From assembly GCF_001194135.2 (NCBI RefSeq), contig NC_068998.1, forward strand, positions 19,752,207 to 19,797,280: a stretch of DNA of 45,074 nucleotides, given 5' to 3'. How positions within the stretch are numbered: position 1 is the stretch's first letter; each line of letters opens with the position of its first letter. The notes below the pieces were generated by a model. It was not told where the DNA came from, did not search any database, and saw nothing but the letters and a program-made list of their open reading frames with translations. The DNA is from Octopus bimaculoides (Eukaryota). The position numbers were made by a program, and so were the translations under genes. Below, piece by piece: positions 351-44,649 of the stretch.

Positions 351-567
351 ACTGGTTTGCAACTGAAACATCTCACACACATTGGCCTAAATATTTAGCT
401 ATAGGTGGCTTTCTTGGCTTTTTAACAAATGTATGTTTGGATGTTATTGTTTAGAAACACTATAGCCTAATTTAATTGAACCAGTCATCTAATATTCATT
501 TAACAAGGACTGACTGTGTTATGTTTCTTTTTCTTTAGATTTTTATTGTGAGTGGTAGAGTTTTGCA

Positions 568-2478
568 ATGGCTACAGAAATTAGTGTAAATGTTGCTGCC
601 GAAAAAGTGATGGAAGATGACTCAAGTGACTCAGATGTTAATAGTTCGGAACATGTGATTAATCATCCTCATGAACCTGACTTCACAAAATCACAAAATT
701 GCTCTGATGATTTAAGCACAAGCAGTGAAAACGACTTACCTCAATTGCTTCATGCCCCATTGAATAAGGAATGTATACCTGTTGATAACTCACAGATTTC
801 AATCAGAGCTAAAAGAGGTCGTAAAAGAAGAAAAGAATTTACAAGATCAGAAAACAAAAAGAGAAGAAACAGTGGATTAAGTTGTATAGGCACGACACAA
901 AAATTCCCAGCCAAAAAGTTGAAAAAAAGCTGTGATTGTAAACGACTAAAATGTAACACAAAAATTTCTGAACAAAGAAGAAATACCTTGTTCAATGTTT
1001 ACTGGGAGTTAGGAGATATAAATAAGCAACGGCAGTTTATTATTAACTGCGTTTCAAAACACAGCAAAGAAAGAAAAAGAACTAAAAGTGATAATTCCAG
1101 AAGAAATTCAAGCTTGAAATATTGTTTTTGCATCGATGATGTTGAAGTGGAAGTCTGCAAAATATTTTTTCTTAACACACTTTCAATTTCAGAAACCACG
1201 GTAACAACTGCTTTAAAAAAAGGTGCAAATGGAGTGGTCGAAGGTGATAATCGTGGAAAAACAAAAAGAAATGATGAGCAGATGAATCATCGCAAAAAAG
1301 AGCTTCGTCAGCATATTTTATCACTTCTACAAGTTCCAAGTCATTATTGTAGGTCTTCAAGCAACTTACTGAGTCTCTCTTCAGAATTAACCTTGTCAAA
1401 AATGTATGACATGTATAAGGAAGTATGTAATGAAAAGGAAACACAACCCTTGAGCTACACAATATACTGGCAAACTTTTCAGTCAATGAACCTAAGTTTT
1501 CATTGTCCCCAAAAAGACCGGTGTGAAACATGTGAAAAGTTTCGAAATCTAAACATTGAAGAACAAGAAAAAGAAGCAGAAAAATTTGAAGTGCATCATC
1601 AAAAGGCAGAAAAAAATTGTGAAATTAAAACCATTTTGAAGCAAAAAGATGACAGAACCAAAGTCACAGCTGTTCTTGACTTGCAAAAAGCTCTTCCTAC
1701 TACGAAATCTGAAGTCTGATTATTTTATGATTCTCAAAACCACTCGACATAATGATATAACTAATGATGAAGTTATTTGTTTTGTCTGGAATGAAACAAA
1801 ATCTGGTCGAGGTAGTAATGAAATTGGCAGTTGCTTGTTCCAAATGCTTAGATAATGGGATGCAAATGGAGCAAAAGGAGTGAACTTCTTTAGTGATGCA
1901 TGCCCAAGACAAAACCGTAACTGAAACATTCTGGCTTTGTTTCATGCTTTCATAAACATAGAAGCAAAGAACATCAAAGTAATTAATCACTACTTCTTTG
2001 AGTCTGGACATAGCTAGAATGAAAACAATTCTGTCCACTCTGTGAATGAATGTGTAACAAAGCACTTCGAAGTGTTTATTTCTGAACAGTGGTACATGCT
2101 CATTAAATCAAAGAAAAAGAGCGACTATGTTACTGGATTGGACCTATCACAAATTTATGATTTTGCAGATGTTGTAGGTTAGACAGTGTCTAGAAAGGGA
2201 ACAGCAAAAGTTTCCAAAAGGCAGATTATGAGTTACAGAAGGGGGAAGTTTTGTACAGTTAATCTGCATTGAACGAGCCTGTGCCACTAAATGCGACATT
2301 TAAAAGAATTAAAAGCATCCAATATAAACTTATAAACAAAGAGGCTTCCAAGCCCATCCAAATAAGCAAAAAGAAAGATTTATTAAACTTGTGTCAAAAA
2401 TTTGCTTTTCCTAAGCCATAAGGTTTCTATCAAAGTTTAAAACAAGTTACCCGTGCGAATGAAGAACAGAATAAGTAA
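568..2478 (+). pseudogene. Decayed DNA transposase, probably CMC/Chapaev-like; first 383 codons open, catalytic domain disrupted
   Basis: ORF 568..1719 has CDCKRLKC, VCKIFFLNTLSISETTVTTALKK, SHYCRSSS, LSFHCPQKDRCETC and VLDLQKALP. After a stop and a frameshift it continues CFVWNETKSGRGSNEIGSCL*, FFSDACPRQNRN*, ESGHS*NENNSVH and KKKDLLNLC...FYQSLK to TAA at 2476-2478. Superfamily call is from recalled motifs. Confidence 0.75.
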
Positions 2479-3204: not shown

Positions 3205-3829
3205 TACATTGTATGCTTATCAGCTAATTCAGTTGCAATTGCTCATAATTCATCCATAATGCTTTAATCATGTTATTAAGCAAAAACCTTTTTTCAGTAG
3301 ATCAGTATGTTGCAAGTTTTAAGGTTTTGTTTTTTTTTGCAAAAATTAGTAAGTCCAAGAAACAAAATTAAACTAAAAATTAACGAAGCCGTGGACAAAA
3401 AAGTACTACCAAAATGTTTTCCAATGTTTCTTAAATGACTGCTTTGCATTACATTGTACTTTTTTTTTGTATATATTAAGAATAAAGTGAGCAATGTAAA
3501 ATGAAATGGAATGGTGAAACTTTTTTTTTTCTCAAAAAGCAACATTTTGGGCTTAGGACAGTTTTGCATAATAGCAATGATTTGTGTGTACATATCTGTC
3601 TGTCTGTCTATATATGTATGTATATATGTATGTATATATTTGTGTATATATATATCATCATCATCATCATCGTTTAACGTCCGCTTTCCANNNNNNNNNN
3701 NNNNNNNNNNNNNNNNNNNNNNNNNNNNNNNNNNNNNNNNNNNNNNNNNNNNNNNNNNNNNNNNNNNNNNNNNNNNNNNNNNNNNNNNNNGTATGTGTGT
3801 GTGTATATATGTGTATATATATTTGGCTT

Positions 3830-5325
3830 TCGTTAACATGGAGAAAGCTCTTGACATGGTCCCCTGATCCTTTATCTGGTGGTAAATGCAGAAACTAGGG
3901 ATAGATGAGTGGTTCGTGAGAGCTATGCAAGGGATGCTGTCAATAAGGCGTGGGTTGGCAGTGAGTATACTGAAGAATTCCGGGCAGGGGTAAGGGTCCA
4001 CCAAGGATCAGTCTTCAGCCCCCTCTTATTCATCATAGTCTTTTAGGCAATAACAGAGGAATTCAAGACTGGATACCCCTGGGATCTCCCCTATGATGAT
4101 GACCTTGCTCTAATAGCTGAGTTAGAACTAGAGGAGAAGTTTCAGGTGTTGAAGCAAGGTCTAGAATCGAAGGGCCTTAGAGTGAATCTAGCCAAAACCA
4201 AAGTCTTAGTAAGTAGGAAGGCAGACAAATCACAAATTCCTTCAGGTAGATGTCCCTGCTTGATCTCTAGAAAAGGCATAGATAGAAACTCCATAAAATG
4301 TACCCAGTGTAAGTTATGGACACATAAGAGGTGCAGCAGTATCAAAGGGAGGCTAACTGAGAAGATAGTTTTTTTGTGTGGCAGATGCACAGAGGCAATA
4401 AACACTGAAAATGTGCAGAAAACAGCTTCTGGCACATGCCAGTGGGAAAAACAAGAAGTAGTTGATAGCTTCCACTACGTAGGTGACCAAGTCGGTAGCT
4501 GGGGTGGATGCTCTGAGAACGTAACTGCTAGAATAAGAATAGCCTGAGCAAAGTTAAGAGAGCTCCTACCTCTGCTGGTGACAAAGAGCCTCTCGCTCAG
4601 AGCGAAAGGGAGACTGTGTGGCGCATGTGTGCGAACAGCTATGTTACACAGCAGCGAAACATGGGCTGTGATTGCTGAGGACATGCATAAACTTGCAAGA
4701 AATGAAGCTAGTATGCTCCGCTGGATGTGTAATATCAGTGTGCATACTTATGACAAAAGTTGGACCTAAGAAGCATCAGATGTGGCGTGCAAGAGAGATG
4801 GCTGTACTGGTATGATCATGTGTTGCATATGTATGAGGACAGCTGTGTGAAAAAGTGTCACACCCTAACAGTGGAGGGAACCTGTGGAAGAGGTAGACCC
4901 AGGAAGACCTGGAATGAGGTGCTGAAGCTCGACCTTCAAGCATTAGGCCTCACGGAGGCAATGTCTCAAAATGCTGCTCTCAAAATGCTGAACCTTATGA
5001 AAGAAATGAAAAAGAACTGAGATATGTGGCACATTGCTGTACTCAAGGAAACCTGCCCATCACAATAGAACAGGTCCTAAAACCAAGGTACCATGTAAAA
5101 AGCACTGGTCCTGGTACCACATAAAAAAGCACTGGTGATGGTGCTACATAAAAAGCACCCAGTACACTCTATGAAGTGTTTGGTGCTAAGGGCATCCAGT
5201 CATAGAAATCAAGCCAAAACAGACTATGAAATCTGGTGTGGCTCTTGGTCTTGTCAGCTCCTGTCAAGCTGTCCTACCCATACCAGCATGGATAATCGAT
5301 GTTAAATATTGATGAGGATGATGGT
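3830..5325 (+). mobile_element. 5'-truncated RTE-clade LINE (RT C-terminal part, Cys-rich insert, 3' UTR with GAT tail)
   Basis: YDDDL-like RT motif near 4095, NLAKTKVLV, SFHYVGDQV, CVRTAMLHSSETWAV, GRGRPRKTW; many stops and frameshifts; GAT-rich tail near 5310-5325. Confidence 0.85.
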
Positions 5326-5534: not shown

Positions 5535-5611
5535 CTGCCTTTGAAATTACCATCAATGACAAGTTGGTCTTCTCTCGTCTTCAATCTTTTTCATTCCCTA
5601 GCTCTGAACAG
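5535..5611 (+). CDS. SelW2/MIEN1-like Rdx gene, copy 1, penultimate coding exon: (A)AFEITINDKLVFSRLQSFSFPSSEQ
   Basis: Acceptor ttttttttag, donor gtcagt, 77 nt, phase 1 to 0, same size and phase as the copy 2 and 3 exons. Matches the Rdx GAFE[IV]x[IV]NGxL[IV][FH]SK...FP motif. Confidence 0.9.
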
Positions 5612-8464: not shown

Positions 8465-8548
8465 ATTGTGAATTTATTACATGATGTCCAGGCAGGCAAG
8501 ACGATCCCTGTTATTGAGGAATCTAGCTCAGGCTGCATAATTCAATAA
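8465..8548 (+). CDS. Copy 1 last coding exon: IVNLLHDVQAGKTIPVIEESSSGCIIQ* (CaaX)
   Basis: Long polypyrimidine tract plus acag acceptor, phase 0. Collinear codon-for-codon with the copy 3 last exon. Ends C-I-I-Q-stop, like the MIEN1 CVIL terminus. Confidence 0.88.
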   Translation: MVNLLHDVQAGKTIPVIEESSSGCIIQ

Positions 8549-9480
8549 AACTAATTTGTTTTCCAGAAATTTCTGCAATTGTTACACCTTAAACTCTTTG
8601 AGTTTCTTTTTCTTTCTTTTTTAATTTTAAATTAATATATGTTAAAGGTCTTGACTATTGTCTTCTTTTTTAAATCCTCATTGAACTGACATATAGACAT
8701 GGACTGGCTTATATTCCAACATTATGGTATATCATACAACCTGTTTTGTCACAGTAAAGATATTTACCCAGTACCCACTCAGTATTTGCCCAATCAACGA
8801 CAACAGTTCATCTGATTGAATGAGTTAACTTTGTTCATTGGTGGAAGATGCTGAGGTGTTTTCCACACAGTGTATGTGGTAAGCGGCACCTACAAGTACT
8901 AGTTAATACTGAGTAGTCTGTTGTTATGGTAGATGGCCATTCTTAATTCCATGTGGCTACAGGTATGTCTGCAGGAGAGTAGGAGTGTCCATGTATATGG
9001 ATACACAGTGGATCTTGAAAGCTTCCATTTGTTGTATCCACTATGTTGCTCCTTGCTGCCTAGCATCAAAATATGTCACTTCTTCAATTAAGTGATCTAA
9101 TTACTCTTTGCCTTCATGATGAGGTGCTAATTAGCTTTATACATGTATTTTTTTTTTTTTTTTTGCCTTTCATATTCTTTCTTCTTTTTCTTCTCATCTA
9201 TTCTTCTCTTTTCTCTCCCTCTTCACATACTTACCATGATTCTATCTTTAACCTCATTCTCTCTTCTCCTTCTCTCTATTCCAGCTGTCTTTTACGTTAA
9301 GTATTCTATTTCTATAGTTTCTCTTTTTTTTCTTATTTCAAAGTAAATATGCAAAACGTTTCTAGTCAAGGGTGAATTCGAAATTATTCAGTGTCTTTCT
9401 TTTGAAAATTCTGTATGTAACAATTGTAGAACTAAAAATACTTTATATTGACTTATTAAAAAATTTTCATTTTGACTTTC

Positions 9481-9563
9481 TTACTGGTTATTTCTGGTTA
9501 TGAAAATTCTGGTCTAAACATGTATTGACCAGAGTTGGATAAATTGTGAGGAATAACCAGTGA
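9481..9563 (+). promoter_or_regulatory. SECIS element, copy 1
   Basis: ATGA 9500-9503, helix II AATTCTGGTC/GACCAGAGTT, apical loop TAAACATGTATT (AAA 9516-9518), GA 9538-9539, helix I 9481-9495 with 9549-9563. Confidence 0.9.
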
Positions 9564-11071: not shown

Positions 11072-11181
11072 TACATCTCTGTCTCCGGTCTCTCTGATCT
11101 ACACTTTATCAACTCTTAAGCCCACTCTTTTTTCCTATCTGTTAATGACTTTCTTATTATTATTGCTAACAGCAGGATATA

Positions 11182-11587
11182 GGTGCAGGAGTGGCTGTGT
11201 GGTAAGTAGCTCATTTACCAACCACATGGTTCAGGGTTCAGTCGCACTGCGTGGCACCTTGAGCAAGTGTCTTCTACTATAGCCTCAGGCCGACCAAAAC
11301 CTTGTGAGTGGATTTGATAGATGGAAACTGAAAGAAACCTGTCGTATATATGTATATGTATATCTATGTCTGTGTGTGTGTTTGTGTGTCTGTGTTTGTC
11401 CCCACAACATCGCTTGACAACCAATACCGGTGTATTTAAGTCCCCGTAACTTAGCGGTTCGGCAAAAGAGACCGATAGGATAAGTACTAGGCTTACAAAG
11501 AATAAGTCCTGGTGTCGATTTGCTCAACTAAAAGGCAGTGCTCCAGCATGGCTGCAGTCAAATGACTGAAACAAGTAAAAGAGTAAG
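11182..11587 (+). mobile_element. Full-length tRNA-derived SINE with internal (TA)/(TG) microsatellite
   Basis: GGAGTGGCTGTGTGG...GGGTTCAGTCGC head, family body, AAACAAGTAAAAGAG end. Confidence 0.85.
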
Positions 11588-11904
11588 CAGTCTACCATTC
11601 AGATTATGTCAGCTCTTCACCATCTCCCAATCTTCCATACACCATCCACATACTGTCTAGGTACCTCACATTAAACCTGTTCTGACCCTATCAATAGAGA
11701 CCTCAAAAATATTCTCCAATAGCATATAATTATGACTTGGTCAACAAAGACACAATTACTGTTCATATCAAAGATTGGTTGACATAATTAAAGCCATTGA
11801 AATAACCACAACTAGTAGTTTCCTGATCTCTGCTGATCTTTCCTAGCAATTCCACATTCAAAACGGGGCTGTGCAGCTAAGAAGCTCAGTTTGCAACCCT
11901 GTGG

Positions 11905-20582: not shown

Positions 20583-20944
20583 TTGGCATACCTACACAAA
20601 TGTGTCCCCACCACCGATTTTGTTTCCTCACAACTTTCAGAAAAATTAATATTTTTTAAAATATTTTCTATAAATGCCTTTCAGGTAGTGTAGATTACAA
20701 TNNNNNNNNNNNNNNNNNNNNNNNNNNNNNNNNNNNNNNNNNNNNNNNNNNNNNNNNNNNNNNNNNNNNNNNNNNNNNNNNNNNNNNNNNNNNNNNNNNN
20801 NNNNNNNNNNNNNNNNNNNNNNNTTGAAGTGACATGTGTAGTACACCAGTCCCTGCCAAAAAGCATTGAAGCCTTGAGGCTCCACCATTAGCTACAATGA
20901 TATGCTAAAAATTCATCATAGTGTCCTCTGGGTACAAGTCCATA

Positions 20945-21982: not shown

Positions 21983-22074
21983 ATGTCAGAAAATAGAAGC
22001 TCAAGCTCAACAATTGACGACACAGAAAAATCTTCTGTGTCACAGAAACACCTTCGTGTGGAAATTGAATACTG
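21983..22074 (+). CDS. Copy 2 first coding exon: MSENRSSSSTIDDTEKSSVSQKHLRVEIEY(C)
   Basis: Acceptor tttctttag before 21947, ATG at 21983, donor TG|gtgagt. LRVEIEYC matches the Rdx beta-1 strand (MIEN1 VRIVVEYC). Confidence 0.87.
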
Positions 22075-22329: not shown

Positions 22330-22940
22330 TTTCAGGTATGAAAGCAAGGTCTAAATTCAAAAGGTTTTAGAGTTAATTTGGCAAAGACCAAAGTCTTAGT
22401 AAGTAGAAAAACAGACAAATCACAAATCCTTTCAGAGAGAAAAGGTGTGGGTAAAAACTCCATAAGGTGTACCTGGTGTAAGCTATGGACACATAAGAGG
22501 AAAGTTAACAGAGAAAATAGTCTTTGCGTGTGGCAAATGTGCAGGTACAATAACACTTGGAATGTACAGAAAATAGACTTCATCAAATGCTTGGAGAGAT
22601 ACTTAGAAGTAGTAGATAGCTTCTGTTACCTAGGTTACTTAGTCAGCAGTGGAAGAAGATGCTCTAAGAATATAGCTACTAGAATGTGAATGGGCTGGGC
22701 AAAGTTCAGAGAGCTACTTTTCTTGGTAACAAAGAGTTTCTCTCTCCGAGTGAAAAGCAGAATGTATGATACCTGTGTGCAAACAGCCATGTTCCAGAGG
22801 ACCTGCAAAGGCTTGAAATAAATGAAGCTAGCATGCTCTACTGGATGTGCGATGTGTGTATGTATGACAGAGTATAAGTGTTTTAGGAGAAAAATTGGGT
22901 ATCAGAGGCATGAGATGTAGTGTGCAAGAGAGAAGACTGT
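22330..22940 (+). mobile_element. RTE LINE fragment
   Basis: NLAKTKVLVSRK, CTWCKLWTHKR, DSFCYLGYLV; same family as 3830-5325. Confidence 0.8.
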
Positions 22941-23564
22941 GCTGGTATGGTAAATGAGCTACTTACCACACAGCCACTCCTGCGCCCATTTAGTAAATTA
23001 ATTAATATTGGTTTCAAATTTTGGCACAAGGCCTGCAATTTTGGGGGAGAGGGTAAGTCAATTATATCAACCCTAGTGCTCAACTGGTACTTATTTTATT
23101 AACCGTGAAAGGATGAAAGGCTAAGTCAATCCTTGTGGTATTTGAAATGAGAATGTAAAGTAGGAAGAAATGCCGCTAAGCAGTAAGAAGACAGGCTGCT
23201 GGGCATTTTTCTGTGTAGTAACAATTCTGTTAGCTTGCTGCCTTAGAAAATTAATTAATACTAGTGGGACCTGTGAATATTTCACGGAATTAATAGTAAA
23301 TCTATTGGGTTATTTGTGAGAACTTTATCCAAGAAACCTGGAAGTGTAGCTTATGTTGTGACTGTATGGAAAGATAGTCACTCATCCGCTACTCATTGAA
23401 AAGTGGGAGAAATTGGAATACGATGATTACTTAATGTACTTTATATGTACACTTTACATACTTTATGTACAATTTTATAGACTTAATATAAAGCACTCAT
23501 AAAATAGATATTCACTCTTATTTTTCCCTTTTACGCATAAGCAAAAAAAAAAAAAGATTCCCAT

Positions 23565-23732
23565 AGGAGTGGCTGTGTGGTAAGTAGCTGGCTTACCAAC
23601 CACATGGCCCCAGGTTCAATCCCACTGCATGGCATCTTGGGAAAGTGTCTTCTACTATAGCTTCGGGCCGACCAAAGTCTTGTGAGTGGATTTGGTAGAC
23701 GGAAACTGAAAGAAGCCTGTTGTATATATGTG

Positions 23733-23783
<51 letters not shown>

Positions 23784-23982
23784 CTGTGTTTGTCCCCCCC
23801 ACCATCCCTTGACAACCGATGGTGGTGTGTTTACGTCCCCGTAACTTAGCGCTTCGGCAAGAGGGACCAATAGAATAAGTACTAGGCTTCCAAAGAATAA
23901 GTCCTGGGGTCGATTTGCTCAACTAAAGGCGGTGCTCCAGCATGGCTGCAGTCAAATGACTGAAACAAGTAAAAGAGAAAGA
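23565..23982 (+). mobile_element. Full-length, young tRNA-derived SINE with internal (TG)n
   Basis: A- and B-box-like motifs; near-match to 12587-13004. Confidence 0.88.
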
Positions 23983-24120
23983 ATATGCATATGATGCAAC
24001 CTTTAGTTAAATTGCATATAATCTGCCACATGAATATTTTTATTCCTATCTTTTCTAGCTATATTCTTTACTAGCCTGTTACAGTTATTCTAAGACAGTG
24101 TATTTGATTTTGTCTTTTAG

Positions 24121-35103: not shown

Positions 35104-37659
35104 CACACTGAATAATAAAATTCACAATTTCTGGAGAAAAAAGACAAGATAGTCATGCTTTGTATCCCTTTACTCAATCAGGGCTAAACTGGTATTAAAC
35201 AACAATGAGAATTAAATCATGAATGTTTGCTACAAGCTTATCAATAACACTGTGACACTTACTATATTTTCAACCATACAAGTCAAATTTTTCTAGCCAA
35301 AACTTACAACCAAAAAAAGCAAGTTGACTTATGACTTTCAAGGACAAAAATTCCGATGTGAAATGCAGCAGGATTTGGAAAGATGATAATGTTTGACTGT
35401 TTACACTGTATATTATATCAACTTATCTGTTAGAACATATGGTAACTGTTACTAGTCTTCTTCATGTGCCATACTTACAGGTGTTGGTGATCACAGACCT
35501 CTTTTCTCTGTTCAAGGCTTTGTCTTCTAATATCATGTTCAATGAACTTGAACTGATGCATCATGTTAAAAAGATTTTTGTTCATCTATGATCTTCAGTA
35601 TTTGTTAACACTATCTATATAGGATAGCTATGAGAAGCCATAACTCTGTAACATTGCTAAGTTTTTGCACTTGTTTGTTTATATAAGGATGAGTTCTACA
35701 TATGCTCTTAGGACTTTTTTCCTCAGTCTTATTGATAGATATTTATTTGACAATATATGAGATCTCACAAAAAACAACCTTGGCCAGCCCAATCCTTTAC
35801 ACAATTTTTTTGATGTTTTTCCTGTCTGATGTAATGATGATTTCCAAATCTTCAACTCTTTGGTACAGCCTCCTTCTCCAAATTGTTTTAAAATTATCTA
35901 AAAACCTTTCATCAGAATTTCATATCAATTTGTGTCCAAACAAGAGCTTAATAATGACAAAATTGTTTTACTAAATTCTGTATTATTTTCAAATTAATAT
36001 TGAAACAAAAGCAGCATATTTAACAGAGATATGGTAACAGAAAGGTTAAAGCTGTCAACTTGTTTCAAGATTGCTCTACTAAGTTTCATGCTTTAAATTG
36101 GTGATACTTTGACATTTATCATTGTCTTTGTTTTGTTTTCATTAACAGTAGTAACAAATATTTCTAAATATTTCACTGACCTTGCTGTGAGGACTGCATC
36201 ATCTGCATAACAGATATTGCTCTTTTCTTTTCCTATCTGTGTACTTTTTTTAATGGCTTATTGAAGAAGTAGTAGTAAAGCTCATGGCCATACAGATTTG
36301 TGAGATTAGTACACTTGATGTTTGTAATAGGTAAAAAAAAGGACTGCAAATAGTAATGCATGTGTGCATACATGTGGAAGTGACATGCAATGAGCTACCT
36401 CAGATGAGAAGAGATCATTGTAACAGTGGTGGAAGAAGTACAATGATAAGACAGTGTGTCTGAGAGCCAGAGATAATAGTATGTTGAATAGCTTTCTTTT
36501 GGATGAAGTTAGGATATTTGAGCTTATAGCAACTGCTGCAGTGTCTCAGATGTTGGAACAGTATTATATTGTAGGTCATATTTGAATTTTGTAGAGAATA
36601 AATAGGTGCTCAGAGATGGAACTATATTCTATCACTGAAAAGGAAAGCTAGTCTTTAAGACAGAGATTTTGCTGTACTGGGACAACCAAGAAAGATCATC
36701 AGAAGCAGTGAGAGTTAGCCTGATAGCATTTGATTTATTGAATAAGTTACTCCTGATTGTATGTTGTCCAAGTCTAGAAAGGGTGGAGGATAAGATTAAT
36801 CAACATGAGCATCTTTGTACTGTTGAATGAAACAAGATTGCCATAAATTGACTGAAAAATATCTTTGAGATCACTGCTCATGGAAGCAACACAGGCTTGA
36901 TCTCACATATATAGGCTGGATATGGATTACCTGTGTAGAAGGTTAGAAGGGAGTGAAGAGTAAGAAGATTAGCAAAGGAGTGAGTATTATTAAAGGTTAT
37001 AGTAAGCTGTTTATGTAAAACTGGAAGAGTGAAGATGCACCAGAATCGATAGTGTGTGGGTCAGAGAGAGCCCTATTTGTGAATGGTGTATACAGTGATA
37101 ACTGAAGAGGATTTGCTTTCTAAAGTTAACTAGTGAATACAATGAGCATATTTATATGTTATTAAACCTCTTCAGTGAAAAATATTCCAATTAGTTAAAT
37201 CATATTGATTTGGAAAGTATTAACATTACTGTAACATTACTGTACCTAGGAATACACACAAATGTCTCTCATTTCAAACTTTTCAAGTCAGACAAGCAGC
37301 TAAGAAATTTAGAAAAAAAAAAAAAAAATTAGAGTTGTGACAACCAATACTAAAAGGAAAGTACTGGAACCAAAATACTAAAAATGGCTGTAACTGGGAA
37401 TAAAAACTGGGTCATGGACTCTGTGACTCTTTGCAAAGCAAACTTTCCAATTCCATGGCTCTGGTATTCTACAGATAGAAATATCTAAATTTACAAATGT
37501 ATCTTACTCATGTCAACAATGATAAATGAATGTATTTTATGATAATGCAAAGTTTCAAACAAGAAATTGTTTAAAGAAATAAAAGAAATAATGACCAGAC
37601 ACAATATAATGTTTTTTTAAAATTTAATTTTCAAATAAATAATTTTCTGTTGAGTTTTT

Positions 37660-37741
37660 CACTGGTTATTCCACACAATTTATCCAATTCTGGTCGATAC
37701 ATGTTTAAACCAGAATTTTCATAACCAAAAATAACCAGTAA
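37660..37741 (-). promoter_or_regulatory. SECIS element, copy 3
   Basis: Minus strand: ATGA (37722-37719), helix II AATTCTGGTT/GACCAGAATT, loop TAAACATGTATC, GA (37684-37683), helix I present. Confidence 0.9.
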
Positions 37742-38632
37742 GAAAGCCAAAAGGAAAATTTTTTAAAAGTCAATATAAACATTTTCAGTTTCATGATTGT
37801 TACATATAGAATTTTCAAAAGTAAGGCATTGAATGATTTTGAATTCACCCTTGACTATAAAACTTTCTGTGGCTGGTTAAAAAGCTTATTTGTGATGAGT
37901 TAGAAGAATATTAGAGCTGAGTAGTCTAATGAGAGGAAAGAGGAATAAATAGAAAATAGATAACACAGCTGAGAAGAGAGGTGTAGATTTGTGAGGAGGG
38001 GTGGGAATAGGAAATATGGAAGGGAGAATATCATGGATAAAGGGGGGAGGGAGTCGGAAAAGAGTAAGAGGAGGAGGAGGAGTATCAGTGAAAATGGGTA
38101 AGTAAAAAGAAAGAAGCATCGAACAGAGAGTGGGGAAGGAGAAACTTTTAAAAACTGGTGGAGCAAAGAAAAGGGGTGAAGGAAAAAAAAAAGAGGACAA
38201 AGATATAGAAAGAGAGAAAATAGAGAAACTGGATGATTGAAGTGAATAGAGCAAAGTCGGGATAGGACAAAAAGTGAGTGACCGAAGTGTGTAGAAGGAA
38301 GAAGGAAATGGAAAAAAGGGGCAGAAAGTAGGTGAGTGAAAAGAGTAGAGGGGGAACAGGGATAGAAAATAGGAAACAAGAAACTGAGATGAAAAGAAAA
38401 GTTCACAGGTGTAAAGTGAATTAGCACCTCATCATGAAGGCAGACAATAATTGTTATAATCACTCAGTTGTATTACATTTTGCTTCTCAATATAATTGTA
38501 TGCAGAGCAGCCGTAAGGAGCTATATGAACAATGCAGTGAATAGATGCTTCCAGTATCCGATATGTATCTATTTATACAGACACTCCTGTAGATATACTT
38601 GCATTCACATGGAATTAAGAATGGCCATCCAA

Positions 38633-38647
38633 CACACACACACACAT

Positions 38648-38718
<71 letters not shown>

Positions 38719-39358
38719 NNNNNNNNNNNNNNNNNNNNNNNNNNNNNNNNNNNNNNNNNNNNNNNNNNNNNNNNNNNNNNNNNNNNNNNNNNNNNNNNNN
38801 NNNNNNNNNNNNNNNNNNNNNNNNNNNNNNNNNNNNNNNNNNNNNNNNNNNNNNNNNNNNNNNNNNNNNNNNNNNNNNNNNNNNNNNNNNNNNNNNNNNN
38901 NNNNNNNNNNNNNNNNNNNNNNNNNNNNNNNNNNNNNNNNNNNNNNNNNNNNNNNNNNNNNNNNNNNNNNNNNNNNNNNNNNNNNNNNNNNNNNNNNNNN
39001 NNNNNNNNNNNNNNNNNNNNNNNNNNNNNNNNNNNNNNNNNNNNNNNNNNNNNNNNNNNNNNNNNNNNNNNNNNNNNNNNNNNNNNNNNNNNNNNNNNNN
39101 NNNNNNNNNNNNNNNNNNNNNNNNNNNNNNNNNNNNNNNNNNNNNNNNNNNNNNNNNNNNNNNNNNNNNNNNNNNNNNNNNNNNNNNNNNNNNNNNNNNN
39201 NNNNNNNNNNNNNNNNNNNNNNNNNNNNNNNNNNNNNNNNNNNNNNNNNNNNNNNNNNNNNNNNNNNNNNNNNNNNNNNNNNNNNNNNNNNNNNNNNNNN
39301 NNNNNNNNNNNNNNNNNNNNNNNNNNNNNNNNNNNNNNNNNNNNNNNNNNNNNNNNNN

Positions 39359-39389
<31 letters not shown>

Positions 39390-39407
39390 CATATACACAC
39401 ACACACA
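38633..39407. repeat. Microsatellite plus 640-N gap inside the copy 3 3' UTR
   Basis: Flanks align with contiguous copy 1 UTR sequence around 8920-8940. Confidence 0.8.
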
Positions 39408-39834
39408 TCACTGCTACCACAACAGGCTACCCAACATTAACCAGTACATTTAGATGCCACTTACAACATACACTGCAATTCAAACATCACAAGACATCTC
39501 ATCACTAAACAAGGTAAACAATGAAGTGTGTTTTTGTTGTTGACTGGACACATATTGAGAAGGATAACATGTAAGGGTAGCAATACGTACTGGATAAATA
39601 TCTTCACTATAACAAGACAGGTTGTACGATGTAGATCATGATACTGGGATGTAAGCCAGTCCATATCATAGCTATATGTCTGCGTCATGAAGATACAGAA
39701 AAGTATGATAGTCAAGGGCTTTAATATGTATTAAATTATAAAGGAAGCATCAAATGAAATTGCAGGGAGTTTAAGGTGTAACATAACTGCAGCATTTTCT
39801 TGTAGATATATTAGCTTTATAGAGTTCAGCAGAC

Positions 39835-39900
39835 CTATTCATCTTTTGAAATGACAGGGATTGGTTTACCTGCTTTGGCATCACGCAATATACATAAAAT
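39835..39900 (-). CDS. Copy 3 last coding exon: ILCILRDAKAGKPIPVISKDE* (TAG), no CaaX
   Basis: Acceptor ttcttttcag, phase 0, collinear with the copy 1 last exon; 3' UTR homology follows. Confidence 0.85.
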   Translation of the reverse strand: MLCILRDAKAGKPIPVISKDE

Positions 39901-40260: not shown

Positions 40261-40535
40261 ACATATGTATGTATGTACGTTTGTGTGTGTGTGTATGTAT
40301 GTGTGTGTGTATGTATGTATGTATGCGTGCATGTATGCATGCATGCATGTATGTATGTATGTATGTATGTTTGTGTGTATGTATGTGTGTGTATGTATGT
40401 ATGCGTGCATGTATGTATGCATGCATGTATGTATGTTTGTGTGTGTGTGTATGTATGTGTGTGTATGTATGTATGCATGCATGTATGTATGCATGCATGT
40501 ATGTATGTATGTATGTATGTATGTATCTATCTATC

Positions 40536-42149: not shown

Positions 42150-42226
42150 CTGTTCATGGACAGCATTAGAACCAGACTCAAGTCGAGAGTGAATAAACTG
42201 ACCATTGACAGAAACTTCAAAGGCAC
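42150..42226 (-). CDS. Copy 3 penultimate coding exon: (G)AFEVSVNGQFIHSRLESGSNAVHEQ
   Basis: Acceptor atatattag, donor gtaaat, 77 nt, same phases as the paralogous exons. Confidence 0.88.
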
Positions 42227-42789
42227 CTAATATATGAGATGGGTTCAATTAGAGATGTTTGCAAGCGTTGAATGCAAAAATATTTCCTACACTATAACAT
42301 TAGGCAACAGAATTTTGAAAAACCTATAAATTATGAAATCTTGCTTCCAGTAAAGTTAAAAATACAACCCCCACCCCCAAAAAAAAAACTTACATTGTAA
42401 AGTCCATGACAATTTTAGTTTAAATATAAAATAATTTTGTTATTTTGGTGACAAAAGAACTTAGTTATGAATAACCGCTGCCTGACTGGTCACGTGCCGG
42501 TGGCATGTGAAAAGCACCATTCGAACATGATTGTTGTCAATGCCACCTGACTGGCTCCCATGCCAGTGGCACGTAAAAAAAGCACCCACTACTCTCTCGG
42601 AGTGGTTGGCATTAGGAAGGTCATCCTGAAACTTTGCCAGATTGGATTGGAGCCTGGTGCAGCCTTCTGACTTGCCATCCCTCAGTCAACTGTCCAACCC
42701 ATGCCAGCATGGAAAGCAGACATTAAACGACGACGACGATGACAATGATATATATATGTATATATACATACATTGATATATGGACAATA

Positions 42790-43520
42790 CGAGAGGGTAC
42801 CCAAAAGTAACTGGAAAGGTTCTCTGTGGGACAAGACCATTGTCATTAAGGCTTCCTTTACTAGAAGCCACTTGATGCGACCCTCAGGCATCAGTCTGCT
42901 GACCAGCAGCATCATGTACAGCCATATAGTGCATCTTTGTTTTGCAGTGCTTCTCCTCTGTTTGTCAATTTTTGTGATGGCTGAAACAAAGGAGCAGTGT
43001 GCTTCCATGAAATTCTGTTTTCTATTGAAGAAAATGGTTGCTGAAACAATTGTCATGCTTCAAACAACTTACAAAGATACTGCCATGAACGAAACACAAG
43101 GTTATGAGTGGTTTTCACACTTTAGGAATGGTCAGTTGTTGCTTGAAGACCGACCTCGTTCAGGGCAACTGTCAACCTCCCGAATGAATGAAAACATCAT
43201 GAAAATTCATGAACTGATCTTGGAGGACCATCACTGAACAATTGACAAACTTGTTGATATGACTTGTGTGTCCTAGAGTGCCTGCCAACGAATTTTGAGT
43301 GAGGAATTGTGAATGAAAAAGAGGTGCAGCAAAATGTGTGCCTCGCTTGCTCACAGAAGATCAAAAGCAGTTATGACTGAATGCATGTTCTGAACTGAAA
43401 GAACAATTGGAGTTGATCAGGACTTTTTTTTCGAAGGCCATCACTGGTAATGCTATGGAATTTTTAGATGTGGAAGAGGTGAAAGAAAAAATAACAGAGG
43501 CGTTAATAGGCATCACTTCT
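42790..43520 (+). mobile_element. Internally deleted mariner remnant
   Basis: EQCASMKFCFLLKKMVAETIVMLQTTY...YEWFSHFRNGQLLLEDRPRSG, ILSEEL; TIR-like start TA|CGAGAGGGTACCCAAAAGTAAC. Confidence 0.78.
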
Positions 43521-43700: not shown

Positions 43701-44018
43701 CCATTACAGTTTGGAGGAACTTTGTTTTCATGATACAGGGATCACCTCTTACAACCTCCACAATGTTCACGAAGCATTAAGTAGTAGTCATGATATCAGC
43801 ATTTTGATATCTGGCACAAATCATCATAATACAGGGAACTCTTTTCCAATTTTCAGATGGCTTCCAGTCCTCTATGTCAGGTAACTTTTTCTCAACTACA
43901 ACTTTAATCTTTAAGCTCTCCAATGCCATTGACTGTTCACCAATACATCAAGCTTTTCCTGAAGAAAGGAGGCATAAAAATCATCAAATTTATCCCAAAG
44001 ATCCTATACATATATGCA

Positions 44019-44106
<88 letters not shown>

Positions 44107-44124
44107 CACACACATATATATATG

Positions 44125-44290
44125 TATATGATGGGCTTCTTTAGGTTTTCATGTACAAAATCCGTTCTTAAGGCTTTGGTTGGCCCAGGGCTATAGTTGA
44201 AGACACTTGCTAAGGTACCATGCAGTAGGACTCAACCCAAGTTCACATGATTGGGAAGCAAGTTTCTTAATCACACCGTCATGCCTATGG
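44125..44290 (-). mobile_element. SINE 5' half, reverse, preceded by (TA)n at 44010-44125
   Basis: Reverse complement of the family head. Confidence 0.65.
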
Positions 44291-44548: not shown

Positions 44549-44649
44549 CAAAAGTCTTGCTAATAATGTCTACAACTTTAGCTTCAGGAAACTCATTCTG
44601 GATGTCTTTACGGAGTGAATTCATCTTGTTCCATCCACCTCAGGCATCA
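44549..44649 (-). CDS. Copy 3 Sec-containing exon: (C)DA-U-GGWNKMNSLRKDIQNEFPEAKVVDIISKTF(G); TGA at 44642-44640
   Basis: Acceptor ttgttttatag, donor G|gtgaga, 101 nt as in copy 2. The Cys codon requires a TG-ending upstream exon that is not in the window. Confidence 0.88.

What the first reader, a model, noticed from the sequence alone, without database searches (positions are those of the whole stretch)
44549..44649. Copy 3 keeps the same TGA while neighbouring codons drift synonymously
Seen by hand alignment of the 101-nt exons of copies 2 and 3: TGA is retained, the next two Gly codons differ only at third positions (GGG/GGT, GGT/GGA), about 8 synonymous-only changes occur in total, and 14 of 33 residues differ, with no indels. 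Inference: the TGA is a selected sense codon, not a shared pseudogene stop.
Basis: partly seen in the sequence, partly recalled or inferred. Interest (0 to 1): 0.7.

Follow-up and report, generated by a model that had tools for sequence, protein, structure and literature searches.

The report
Octopus selenoprotein gene, Sec codon confirmed
The TGA in this 101-base exon is almost certainly a selenocysteine codon in one of four neighbouring octopus genes for small SelW2/MIEN1-like redox proteins, a known kind of gene that public annotations cut short at the TGA.

Summary
Window 44649..44549 (-) is a 101-nt exon with AG/GT borders. It aligns without indels to 24121..24221 (+). TGA is kept, 14 of 33 residues differ, and 8 changes are synonymous-only.

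The exon is exon 2 of a four-exon gene ("c3") of the Rdx family (PF10262, TIGR02174). The closest solved structure is human MIEN1. The TGA is the U of a CxxU redox motif.

The predicted TG-ending first exon with an ATG exists 4 kb beyond the window. A SECIS stem-loop lies in the 3'UTR at 37742..37659 (-), with AUGA, apical AAA and GA all invariant.

Four paralogues form a 100-kb cluster and all keep the TGA. So do the O. vulgaris orthologues of c1, c2 and c3 and the O. sinensis c2 orthologue, and spliced transcripts of two paralogues carry it in frame. The genome has tRNA-Sec.

Family-wide omega is 0.58 and rejects neutrality (p=0.0014). For c3 alone, neutrality cannot be rejected, and no c3 transcript was found.

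This is a known kind of gene and a new, misannotated member. Interest is modest.

The parts
44549..44649 (-). Exon 2 of gene c3 (the finding). It is 101 nt and encodes (C)DAUGGWNKMNSLRKDIQNEFPEAKVVDIISKTF(G). Phase 2 at the 5' end, phase 1 at the 3' end.
   Evidence: AG acceptor and GTGAGA donor. The exon length is the same in all four paralogues. It is 93% identical in O. vulgaris, with TGA and splice sites kept.
44640..44642 (-). In-frame TGA, the proposed selenocysteine codon: the U of the CxxU motif (C-D-A-U).
   Evidence: It aligns to the second Cys of CEPC in human MIEN1. It is one of only 7 of 82 codon columns that are nucleotide-invariant in all 10 sequences that cover it. The flanking invariant Cys uses 2 codons and the flanking Gly uses 3.
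42150..42226 (-). Exon 3 of c3, 77 nt, encoding (G)AFEVSVNGQFIHSRLESGSNAVHEQ.
   Evidence: Pfam Rdx hit in six-frame search. AG/GTAAAT borders. The junction is confirmed by the O. vulgaris protein model P0002.
39835..39900 (-). Coding part of exon 4 of c3, ILCILRDAKAGKPIPVISKDE followed by a TAG stop. There is no CaaX box.
   Evidence: The e3-e4 junction is confirmed by P0002 and is conserved in O. vulgaris and O. sinensis.
37743..39834 (-). 3'UTR of c3 between the stop codon and the SECIS. It contains an assembly gap of 640 N at 38719-39358.
   Evidence: It is collinear with the 3'UTRs of c1 and c4. In c1 the equivalent stretch is one unspliced piece in transcript L018.
37659..37742 (-). SECIS element of c3. 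It has a 14-bp lower helix, an internal loop, the AUGA/GA quartet, a 10-bp upper helix and a 12-nt apical loop that starts UAAA.
   Evidence: MFE fold -25.7 kcal/mol. Rfam SECIS_1 scores 29.6 bits, E=2.4e-4, at 37730..37667; this is below the gathering score of 35. In nine copies, 96% of cells are paired against 30-53% in slid registers, with 2 pairs changed on both sides. It is 81/83 identical in O. vulgaris.
37623..37628 (-). ATTAAA, a likely poly(A) signal 31 nt 3' of the SECIS.
   Evidence: The hexamer is invariant in all four paralogues (alignment; sequence). Its function is inferred.
21983..22074 (+). Exon 1 of paralogue c2, MSENRSSSSTIDDTEKSSVSQKHLRVEIEY + TG.
   Evidence: GTGAGT donor. 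Orthologous exon in O. vulgaris and O. sinensis.
24121..24221 (+). TGA at 24128-24130.
   Evidence: It is 100% identical over 99 nt in O. vulgaris and O. sinensis.
24683..24759 (+). Exon 3 of c2.
30639..30721 (+). SECIS of c2. It converges tail-to-tail with c3.
5535..5611 (+). Exon 3 of paralogue c1. Its exons 1 and 2, the latter carrying the TGA, lie upstream of the window at G000:C18:19735302-19735360 and 19741939-19742039.
   Evidence: The splicing is confirmed by transcript L018.
8465..8548 (+). Coding part of exon 4 of c1. It ends ...SSSGCIIQ*, a CaaX-like end.
   Evidence: It aligns up to the Cys-Val-Ile of the MIEN1 CaaX end in chain 2LJK.
9480..9563 (+). SECIS of c1.
   Evidence: It is 98.8% identical in O. 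vulgaris.

Best explanation
The 101-nt exon is exon 2 of a four-exon selenoprotein gene, c3. The gene belongs to the SELENOW2/MIEN1 (Rdx12) branch of the Rdx family of thioredoxin-like proteins.

Gene structure, minus strand:
- Exon 1 lies outside the window at window-equivalent 48781..48699 (G000:C18:19800905-19800987). It encodes MSTNEDFAPNTNVENKNPEELYVVIEY plus TG.
- Exon 2 is 44649..44549.
- Exon 3 is 42226..42150.
- Exon 4 starts at 39900, with a TAG stop at 39837..39835.
- A 3'UTR of about 2.1 kb ends in a SECIS stem-loop at 37742..37659, followed by ATTAAA.

The spliced product is 108 residues. The UGA is the fourth position of a Cys-Asp-Ala-Sec motif. By alignment with the folded paralogue, it sits between strand beta-1 and helix alpha-1, which is the redox centre of the family.

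Inferred mechanism: the SECIS kink-turn recruits SBP2 and eEFSec with Sec-tRNA(Sec), so the ribosome reads UGA as selenocysteine. The protein then acts as a small Cys-Sec oxidoreductase.

c3 is one of four tandem paralogues, c1 to c4, spread over about 100 kb. All four have the same 101-nt and 77-nt exons, the same TGA and their own SECIS. c1 and c2 end in a CaaX-like box, as prenylated MIEN1 does. c3 and c4 do not.

Shown here: gene structure, homology, TGA and SECIS conservation, transcripts for c1-type and c2-type genes, and tRNA-Sec. Inferred: actual Sec insertion, expression of c3, and its redox activity.
For: 1. The spliced proteins match Rdx PF10262 (E from 2e-17 to 7e-13) and TIGR02174 CXXU_selWTH, above both cut-offs. 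This holds only when the part upstream of the TGA is included.

2. The best solved relative is human MIEN1, 2LJK (E=5e-9 for c3, 1e-12 for c1). The TGA aligns to its second active-site Cys.

3. An AlphaFold model of the c1-type protein (pLDDT 85.7) places CxxU between beta-1 (residues 14-20) and alpha-1 (26-39). It matches 2FA8, 2LJK (TM 0.70) and 2NPB.

4. Exon 1 has an ATG, ends in TG and is followed by GTAAGT.

5. The TGA is kept in four paralogues, in the O. vulgaris c1, c2 and c3 orthologues, in the O. sinensis c2 orthologue, and in two transcripts from other samples. It is one of 7 fully invariant codon columns out of 82. The neighbouring invariant Cys and Gly columns use 2 and 3 different codons.

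6. A SECIS lies 3' of each copy in the right orientation. ATGA, AAA and GGAT are invariant, 96% of cells are paired, and there are compensatory changes. Rfam SECIS_1 is the top hit.

7. Transcripts L018 and L019 are spliced exactly as modelled and carry the TGA in frame, with no other stop back to the ATG.

8. Family-wide omega is 0.58. The LRT against omega=1 gives 2dlnL=10.2, p=0.0014.

9. tRNA-SeC genes with anticodon TCA are present.

10. Between this genome and O. vulgaris, c3 has no indel, no stop and all splice sites kept in 327 coding nt. The aligned introns show about one gap opening per 100 nt.
Against: - The constraint on c3 itself is weak. Against O. vulgaris, omega is 0.82 (95% interval 0.35-2.6). 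The c3-clade omega is 0.71, which does not differ from 1 (p=0.48) or from the background (p=0.62).
- c3 coding exons diverge about as much as its introns, 5-13% against 7-12%.
- c3 has Asn-Ala where at least 90% of family members have an aromatic residue followed by Pro.
- No c3 transcript or full-length protein model was found in the protein collection. The only hit is the truncated O. vulgaris model.
- The SECIS scores below Rfam's gathering score (29.6 against 35). It was not reported at all in the whole-window scans.
- The SECIS shows 2 differences in 83 nt against about 5% in the flanking UTR. That is not significantly lower.
- Sec insertion was not observed directly.
Confidence: 0.85

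Rival explanations
1. The family is a genuine set of selenoprotein genes, but copy 3 itself is silent or decaying: a young, unprocessed pseudogene or a gene under relaxed constraint. On this reading its TGA is inherited rather than currently selected.
For: - c3 omega is 0.71-0.82 and does not differ from 1.
- Exon divergence is about the same as intron divergence.
- The near-invariant aromatic-Pro motif is lost: N-A here and N-P in O. vulgaris.
- c3 has no CaaX end.
- No transcript or full-length model for c3 was found in the protein collection.
Against: - The 108-codon frame, all six splice sites, the exon lengths and the stop codon are intact in this genome and in O. vulgaris. In O. sinensis only exons 3-4 and the SECIS were recovered; they are intact.
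- There are no indels in 327 coding nt, where the intron rate predicts about three.
- The c3 lineage is old (dS to c2 is about 0.5-0.7), yet c3 still scores E=2.6e-13 on Rdx.
- The core blocks ELYVVIEYCDAUGGW, FPEAKVVDI and SKTFGAFEVSVNGQFIHSR are identical between the species.
- The SECIS is 97.6% identical.
- c1, which does have a transcript, shows the same high omega of 0.82. High omega is therefore a trait of the family, not a sign of c3 decay.
Confidence: 0.12
2. The TGA is a real stop, and the protein starts at the Met just downstream (MNSLRKDIQ...), as in the public O. vulgaris and O. sinensis models. The stretch upstream of the TGA would then be 5'UTR or a short upstream ORF.
For: Public annotation pipelines produced exactly such models: P0002 (72 aa) and P0004 (78 aa). 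An ATG lies six codons after the TGA in c2, c3 and c4.
Against: - The truncated product lacks strand beta-1 and the whole CxxU centre, which are positions 1-20 of the 74-position Rdx profile.
- The sequence upstream of the TGA is conserved as coding sequence: V-x-I-E-Y/F-C-x-x-U-G in all copies, with synonymous variation.
- c1 has no ATG at that place (it has GTG), yet it is transcribed.
- A conserved SECIS would have no role.
- Truncation at UGA is the known annotation artefact for selenoproteins (PMC13134290, abstract).
Confidence: 0.02
3. All copies are pseudogenes that share an ancestral nonsense mutation.
For: No positive evidence. The only support is that the TGA is shared by all copies.
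Against: - Neutrality is rejected family-wide (p=0.0014).
- There is only one 'stop' in each copy, always at the catalytic position.
- Spliced transcripts exist.
- The SECIS elements are conserved.
- About 4.8 substitutions per codon are expected over the tree (sum of branch lengths), yet the TGA is unchanged in 10 of 10 sequences.
Confidence: 0.01

Closest known systems
SELENOW2 / MIEN1 (formerly Rdx12, C17orf37) clade of the Rdx family
   Same: - Thioredoxin-like Rdx fold.
- Cys-x-x-Sec/Cys motif after strand beta-1.
- Shared sequence pattern 'GAFE(V/I)x(V/I)N...SK/R(L/I)' and the same protein size.
- The best PDB match is human MIEN1, 2LJK.
- NCBI names the O. sinensis c2 orthologue 'migration and invasion enhancer 1-like'.
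- c1 and c2 end in a CaaX-like box, like prenylated MIEN1.
- Fish MIEN1 and SELENOW2 carry Sec, and invertebrate members are placed in the SELENOW2 branch (PMC13134290, section 14).
   Different: - Amniote MIEN1 has Cys, not Sec.
- c3 and c4 lack the CaaX end.
- c3 lacks the aromatic-Pro motif.
- c2 and c3 have a 20-30-residue, low-complexity N-terminal extension.
- The four-gene tandem cluster is specific to this lineage.
- Orthology to vertebrate SELENOW2 as opposed to MIEN1 was not tested here by a tree.
Selenoprotein W (SELENOW1)
   Same: Rdx family, CxxU motif, one Sec, a small four-to-six-exon gene with the Sec codon in exon 2, and a SECIS in the 3'UTR. The exon layout of SELENOW is from my own knowledge.
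   Different: The sequence match is much weaker: 2NPB gives E=0.004-0.009, against 5e-9 to 1e-12 for MIEN1. SELENOW1 has no CaaX end.
Zebrafish SelW2a/SelW2b tandem pair
   Same: A precedent for tandem duplicates of this family that both keep Sec (PMC3316567, section 8).
   Different: That is two copies in a vertebrate. Here there are four copies, in mixed orientation (+,+,-,+), with loss of the prenylation box in two of them.
Eukaryotic SECIS element (Rfam RF00031 SECIS_1)
   Same: - AUGA on the 5' side and GA on the 3' side of a kink-turn quartet.
- An upper helix of about 10 bp.
- An AAA motif at the 5' edge of the apical loop.
- Location in the 3'UTR.
   Different: It scores 29.6 bits, below the curated 35-bit gathering score. 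The lower helix is unusually long, at 14 bp. It was missed by whole-window scans.

Membership tests
Rdx family (Pfam PF10262; NCBIfam TIGR02174 CXXU_selWTH) | Profile match above the curated cut-off over the whole domain | tested here: met
   c3 scores 50.4 bits (cut-off 22.6) over profile positions 2-73 of 74. On TIGR02174 it scores 47.1 bits (cut-off 34.2). All four paralogues pass.
Rdx family (Pfam PF10262; NCBIfam TIGR02174 CXXU_selWTH) | CxxC/CxxU motif in the loop between beta-1 and alpha-1 of a thioredoxin-like fold | tested here: met
   The motif is C-D-A-U in c3. The fold was tested on the c1-type paralogue only: pLDDT 85.7, beta-1 at residues 14-20, CxxU at 20-23, alpha-1 at 26-39, with Foldseek hits 2FA8, 2LJK and 2NPB.
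Rdx family (Pfam PF10262; NCBIfam TIGR02174 CXXU_selWTH) | Conserved aromatic-Pro after the G-x motif (F74 and P75 in at least 90% of the aligned members) | tested here: not met
   c3 has N-A here and N-P in O. vulgaris. c1 has F-P, c2 has Y-P and c4 has Y-P. This is a conserved feature, not a criterion of the curated models, so membership by profile still stands.
Eukaryotic selenoprotein gene | In-frame UGA aligned to Sec or Cys of homologues, with conserved coding sequence on both sides | tested here: met
Eukaryotic selenoprotein gene | SECIS element in the 3'UTR, on the same strand, with AUGA, an unpaired AA and GA | tested here: met
   The element is at 37742..37659 (-). All core motifs are invariant in 9 copies and 96% of cells are paired. 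Caveat: Rfam SECIS_1 gives 29.6 bits, below the gathering score of 35.
Eukaryotic selenoprotein gene | The organism has Sec-decoding machinery | tested here: met
   There are three tRNA-Sec hits above the gathering score. Two of them are called tRNA-SeC (tca) by ARAGORN. SBP2, eEFSec and the other protein factors were not searched for.
Eukaryotic selenoprotein gene | An mRNA that carries the UGA in frame | tested here: inconclusive
   Shown for the c1-type (L018) and c2-type (L019) transcripts. No c3 transcript was found in the collection.
Eukaryotic selenoprotein gene | Selenium actually incorporated at the UGA | not testable with these tools
   This needs 75Se labelling or mass spectrometry.
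MIEN1 in the strict (gnathostome) sense | C-terminal CaaX prenylation box | tested here: not met
   c3 ends ...ISKDE and c4 ends ...KAAP. c1 (CIIQ/CIIL/CTIV) and c2 (CTIL/CTIV) do have such an end.
MIEN1 in the strict (gnathostome) sense | Descent from the gnathostome SELENOW2 duplication | not tested
   According to PMC13134290, all invertebrate genes fall in the SELENOW2 branch. No tree with vertebrate sequences was built here. I therefore file the gene under 'SELENOW2/MIEN1-like', not under MIEN1.

The most novel reading that the evidence does not exclude
The cluster may be an octopod-lineage expansion of Sec-containing SELENOW2/MIEN1-like genes that has split into two kinds. c1 and c2 would be membrane-anchored, CaaX-bearing forms. 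c3 and c4 would be soluble forms without CaaX. The fast protein evolution (omega 0.6-0.8) would then reflect diversification of substrate or partner specificity rather than relaxed constraint. Under this reading c3 has lost the family's aromatic-Pro motif but keeps Sec and its SECIS, which would make it a functionally new small selenoprotein.
Probability: 0.3. Interest if true: 0.4.

Novelty: new member of a known kind. Interest (0 to 1): 0.3.

Why it matters
- It corrects gene models. The public octopus annotations of this cluster are truncated at the UGA or fused across genes (P0002, P0004, P0006), so four selenoproteins are missing from the annotated proteomes.
- It documents a four-gene tandem family of Sec-containing MIEN1/SELENOW2-like genes in a cephalopod. 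The family has matched SECIS elements and shows gain or loss of a prenylation box between paralogues.
- It gives a small natural series for asking why Sec is kept while the rest of the protein changes quickly.
- It is a practical warning for scans. Standard Rfam scans of the whole window missed all three SECIS elements.

Tried and rejected
- **Rfam whole-window scans.** At the gathering threshold there were no hits. At E<=10 there were 97 hits, all microsatellite-driven miRNA or snoRNA look-alikes (mir-297 and similar) and no SECIS. I rejected them as artefacts of (TA)n and (TG)n repeats. The SECIS appeared only in a 161-nt scan.
- **Exon 2 of c1 inside the window.** None exists there. It lies 10 kb upstream of the window start, beyond an N run.
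- **Exon 4 of c2.** It is not in this assembly. The candidate 'VPVIEFNS' at 27066-27089 is part of a GC-rich repeat, not an exon. The real exon was seen in O. vulgaris and O. sinensis.
- **First regex for exon 1.** It missed c2 and c3 because their first exons exceed the 25-codon limit I had set. They were recovered by blastn with the c1 and c4 exon-1 sequences.
- **Pairwise dN/dS as a decisive test.** Every single pair of orthologues is too short and too similar to reject omega=1. A two-ratio branch model for c3 was also uninformative.
- **Single-sequence AlphaFold model.** It reached pLDDT 56 and I did not use it. The model built with an alignment replaced it.
- **A first NG86 script** timed out.
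- **SelW proper, SelH or SelT as the closest subfamily.** I considered these and rejected them, because MIEN1 is the far better match.

Full report
**Setting**

The window is G000:C18:19752207-19797280 of a 2.34-Gb eukaryotic assembly. It is AT-rich and full of microsatellites, SINE-like repeats and assembly gaps. The nearest public sequences are from Octopus vulgaris and O. sinensis, at synonymous divergence of about 0.1. The genome is therefore another Octopus species. Which species it is was not established.

**The observation**

On the minus strand, 44649..44549 reads ag|T GAT GCC TGA GGT GGA TGG ... TTT G|gtgaga, 101 nt. Its only strong match in the window is 24121..24221 on the plus strand. 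That stretch is also 101 nt, has AG/GT borders, and carries TGA at the same codon.

Codon by codon:
- 31 of 101 nt differ, with no indel.
- 14 of 33 residues differ.
- 7 codons differ synonymously only, and the split Cys codon TGC/TGT makes 8.
- The two Gly codons after TGA are GGG/GGT and GGT/GGA.

**What the exon belongs to**

A six-frame search of the whole genome with Pfam Rdx found exon-sized hits next to both copies and two more nearby. I fetched 90 kb of flanks and compared the copies. This gave four paralogous genes with the same architecture: exon 1 of variable length, ending TG|gt; exon 2 of 101 nt; exon 3 of 77 nt; and exon 4 carrying the stop.

| Gene | Strand | Exons | SECIS |
|---|---|---|---|
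| c1 | + | e1 and e2 upstream of the window; e3 5535-5611; e4 8465-8548 | 9480-9563 |
| c2 | + | e1 21983-22074; e2 24121-24221; e3 24683-24759; e4 lost in an assembly gap | 30639-30721 |
| c3 | - | e1 at window-equivalent 48781..48699; e2 44649..44549; e3 42226..42150; e4 39900..39835 | 37742..37659 |
| c4 | + | 19-37 kb beyond the window end (window-equivalent 64302-82402) | window-equivalent 83748-83830 |

Exon 1 of c3 corresponds to C18:19800905-19800987 and lies beyond a 2.2-kb N run. It encodes MSTNEDFAPNTNVENKNPEELYVVIEY, ends in TG, and is followed by gtaagt.

**Family assignment**

The spliced proteins, with U read as C for the search, match Rdx (PF10262) at E from 2e-17 to 7e-13. They also match TIGR02174 'CXXU_selWTH'. 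Both matches are above the curated cut-offs and cover the whole domain.

Among solved structures the best match is human C17orf37/MIEN1 (2LJK), at E=5e-9 for c3 and 1e-12 for c1. Mouse SelW (2NPB) reaches only E of about 0.004-0.009. The TGA aligns with the second Cys of MIEN1's CEPC.

An AlphaFold model of the c1-type protein, built with a 48-sequence alignment, has pLDDT 85.7. It puts C-x-x-U between beta-1 and alpha-1. Foldseek returns SelW-related bacterial proteins, MIEN1 (TM 0.70) and SelW.

The literature places invertebrate genes of this kind in the SELENOW2 branch of a SELENOW2/MIEN1 clade. Fish MIEN1 and SELENOW2 keep Sec, while amniote MIEN1 has Cys (PMC13134290, section 14; PMC3316567, section 8). 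I therefore call the genes SELENOW2/MIEN1-like.

**Evidence that the TGA is read as Sec**

1. *Conservation.* All four paralogues keep the TGA. So do the O. vulgaris orthologues of c1, c2 and c3 and the O. sinensis orthologue of c2, where splice sites are also kept. Of 82 aligned codon columns, only 7 are nucleotide-invariant in every sequence, and TGA is one of them. The invariant Cys three codons upstream uses two codons. The invariant Gly just downstream uses three.

2. *SECIS.* A block of about 90 nt is the best-conserved sequence 3' of each gene, in the gene's orientation. It folds into a 14-bp lower helix, an internal loop, AUGA opposite GA, a 10-bp upper helix and a 12-nt loop that begins UAAA.
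   - In nine copies from three species, ATGA, AAA and GGAT are invariant.
   - 96% of pair cells are standard pairs, against 30-53% when the partner is slid by 1-3 columns.
   - Two upper-helix pairs change on both sides.
   - Rfam's SECIS_1 is the top hit in a short-stretch scan (29.6 bits, E=2.4e-4). That is under the 35-bit gathering score, and whole-window scans missed it.
   - An invariant ATTAAA follows 31 nt later.

3. *Transcripts.* Two contigs assembled from sequencing runs are spliced mRNAs. L018 is c1-type and L019 is c2-type from another species. Their junctions are exactly those modelled. Each has a single in-frame TGA at the CxxU position and no other stop back to the ATG. L018 also shows that the 3'UTR of c1 is unspliced for about 800 nt after the stop, almost to the SECIS.

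4. *Machinery.* The genome has tRNA-Sec genes. Three hits exceed the gathering score, and two of them are called tRNA-SeC (tca) by ARAGORN.

5. *Annotation pattern.* The public models show the typical selenoprotein artefact. P0002 and P0004 start at the Met just after the TGA. P0006 fuses c1 and c2 and stops at '...IEYCQS', which is the TGA.

| Comparison | omega | Uncertainty or test |
|---|---|---|
| Exon 2, c2 vs c3 | 0.46 | bootstrap 95% 0.14-1.21; Fisher p=0.10 |
| 64-codon core, c2 vs c3 | 0.71 | bootstrap 95% 0.33-1.46; Fisher p=0.43 |
| c3, this genome vs O. vulgaris | 0.82 | 22 nonsynonymous and 7 synonymous differences in 107 codons |
| c1, this genome vs O. vulgaris | 0.82 | bootstrap 95% 0.27-3.71; Fisher p=0.78 |
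| c2, this genome vs O. vulgaris | 2.1 | 9 differences in all |
| GY94+F3x4 M0, 11 sequences, 82 codons, TGA masked | 0.58 | vs omega=1: 2dlnL=10.2, p=0.0014 |
| Two-ratio model, c3 clade | 0.71 | vs background (0.56) p=0.62; vs 1 p=0.48 |

No single pair of orthologues differs significantly from 1. My own implementation of M0 reproduced the IQ-TREE likelihoods.

The family is under purifying selection, but on average this is weak for so small a protein. dN/dS cannot decide the status of c3 on its own.

Consistent with this, c3 exons differ from O. vulgaris by 5-13% and its introns by 7-12%. What separates the c3 exons from its introns is the absence of indels. There are none in 327 coding nt, where about three would be expected from one gap opening per 100 aligned intron nt. 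All splice sites, the start and the stop are also kept.

**Points against a fully conventional c3**

- It lacks the CaaX-like end that c1 (CIIQ, CIIL, CTIV) and c2 (CTIL, CTIV) share with MIEN1.
- It has N-A where at least 90% of relatives have an aromatic residue followed by Pro.
- No transcript of c3 was found.

For these reasons I keep a 12% rival that c3 is silent or decaying while the family is real. Two other rivals fit the data badly. The first is that the TGA is a true stop with initiation at the next Met. The second is that all copies share a pseudogene stop. Against both stand the conserved coding sequence upstream of the TGA, the SECIS elements, the transcripts and the family-wide LRT.

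**Mechanism**

Inferred from established knowledge of eukaryotic Sec decoding: the 3'UTR SECIS kink-turn binds SBP2. SBP2 brings eEFSec with Sec-tRNA(Sec) to the ribosome paused at UGA codon 31 of the c3 mRNA. Sec is inserted to give a Cys-x-x-Sec redox centre on a thioredoxin-like scaffold. None of these steps was observed here.

**Verdict**

The object is a new and so far misannotated member, in fact a four-gene cluster, of a known kind of selenoprotein gene. A specialist would not be surprised. The value lies in corrected gene models and in a tidy example of Sec retention in fast-evolving tandem paralogues.

Noticed in passing
L017, L020 and L021 (O. vulgaris OX597831.1 at about 56.78-56.86 Mb; O. 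sinensis CM016873.1 at about 21.67-21.69 Mb): Public protein models of this cluster are wrong in the way typical for selenoproteins. P0002 and P0004 start at the Met after the TGA. P0006 fuses c1 exons 3-4 with c2 exon 1 and ends at '...IEYCQS', which is the TGA.
   Followed up: yes
window 21983-22074 compared with L020:47161-47372 and L021:3663-3874: Exon 1 of c2 is 92 nt here but 212 nt in O. vulgaris and O. sinensis. The difference is a tandem repeat of a (T/P/R)E(K/R)SSVSQ-type unit in the N-terminal tail.
   Followed up: partly
window 8534-8548 (the c1 C-terminus), plus L018, L019, L020 and L021: c1 and c2 end in CaaX-like boxes: CIIQ here, CIIL in transcript L018, CTIV in O. vulgaris c1, CTIL in c2, and CTIV in L019. 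c3 and c4 have no such box. This suggests prenylated and non-prenylated paralogues.
   Followed up: partly
window 42749-43237 (+), inside intron 2 of c3: A stop-free frame of 162 aa matches HTH_48, the Mos1/mariner transposase N-terminal domain (E=9e-7). It is a transposon relic in the intron.
   Followed up: partly
window 559-1719 (+): A stop-free frame of 386 aa, rich in Ser, Lys and Glu, with no Pfam family above cut-off. There is only a sub-threshold Cdc6_C hit. It may be a transposon ORF or an unannotated exon.
   Followed up: partly
window 4047-4547 (+), 22342-22689 (+) and 34054-34449 (+): Related repeat copies encode '...GLRVNLAKTKVLVSRK...C..C..W.H..C' with a weak PHD-like Cys/His pattern. 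The same repeat sits near several of the paralogues. It is probably a retroelement fragment.
   Followed up: no
window 3691-3790, 20702-20823, 27091-27779, 28829-29606, 29920-29929 and 38719-39358, and directly outside both window ends: These are runs of N. Exon 4 of c2 is missing from the assembly, and part of the c3 3'UTR and intron 1 is unread. The window is bounded on both sides by N runs of about 2 kb.
   Followed up: yes
window 23560-23990 and 11180-11590, and many other places: A tRNA-like SINE family of about 400 bp (GGAGTGGCTGTGTGGTAAGTAGC...) followed by (TG)n is scattered through the cluster at 75-90% identity. It dominates blastn comparisons between the paralogues.
   Followed up: no
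window 40343-40485, 28011-28157, 44007-44127 and others: All Rfam 'miRNA' matches (mir-297, mir-3149, mir-1277 and the rest) fall on (TA)n, (TG)n and (CATA)n microsatellites and are far below their gathering scores. They are artefacts.
   Followed up: yes
L020:1-5727 (-), O. vulgaris: A SNAPC5-domain gene lies just upstream of c1 in O. vulgaris. It could serve as a synteny anchor for the cluster.
   Followed up: no
G000:C24:3338519-3338604 (-) and 3308654-3308739 (+); C132200:3790-3875: There are two tRNA-SeC (tca) genes 30 kb apart in opposite orientation. A third Rfam hit (63.9 bits) is one that ARAGORN does not call.
   Followed up: partly
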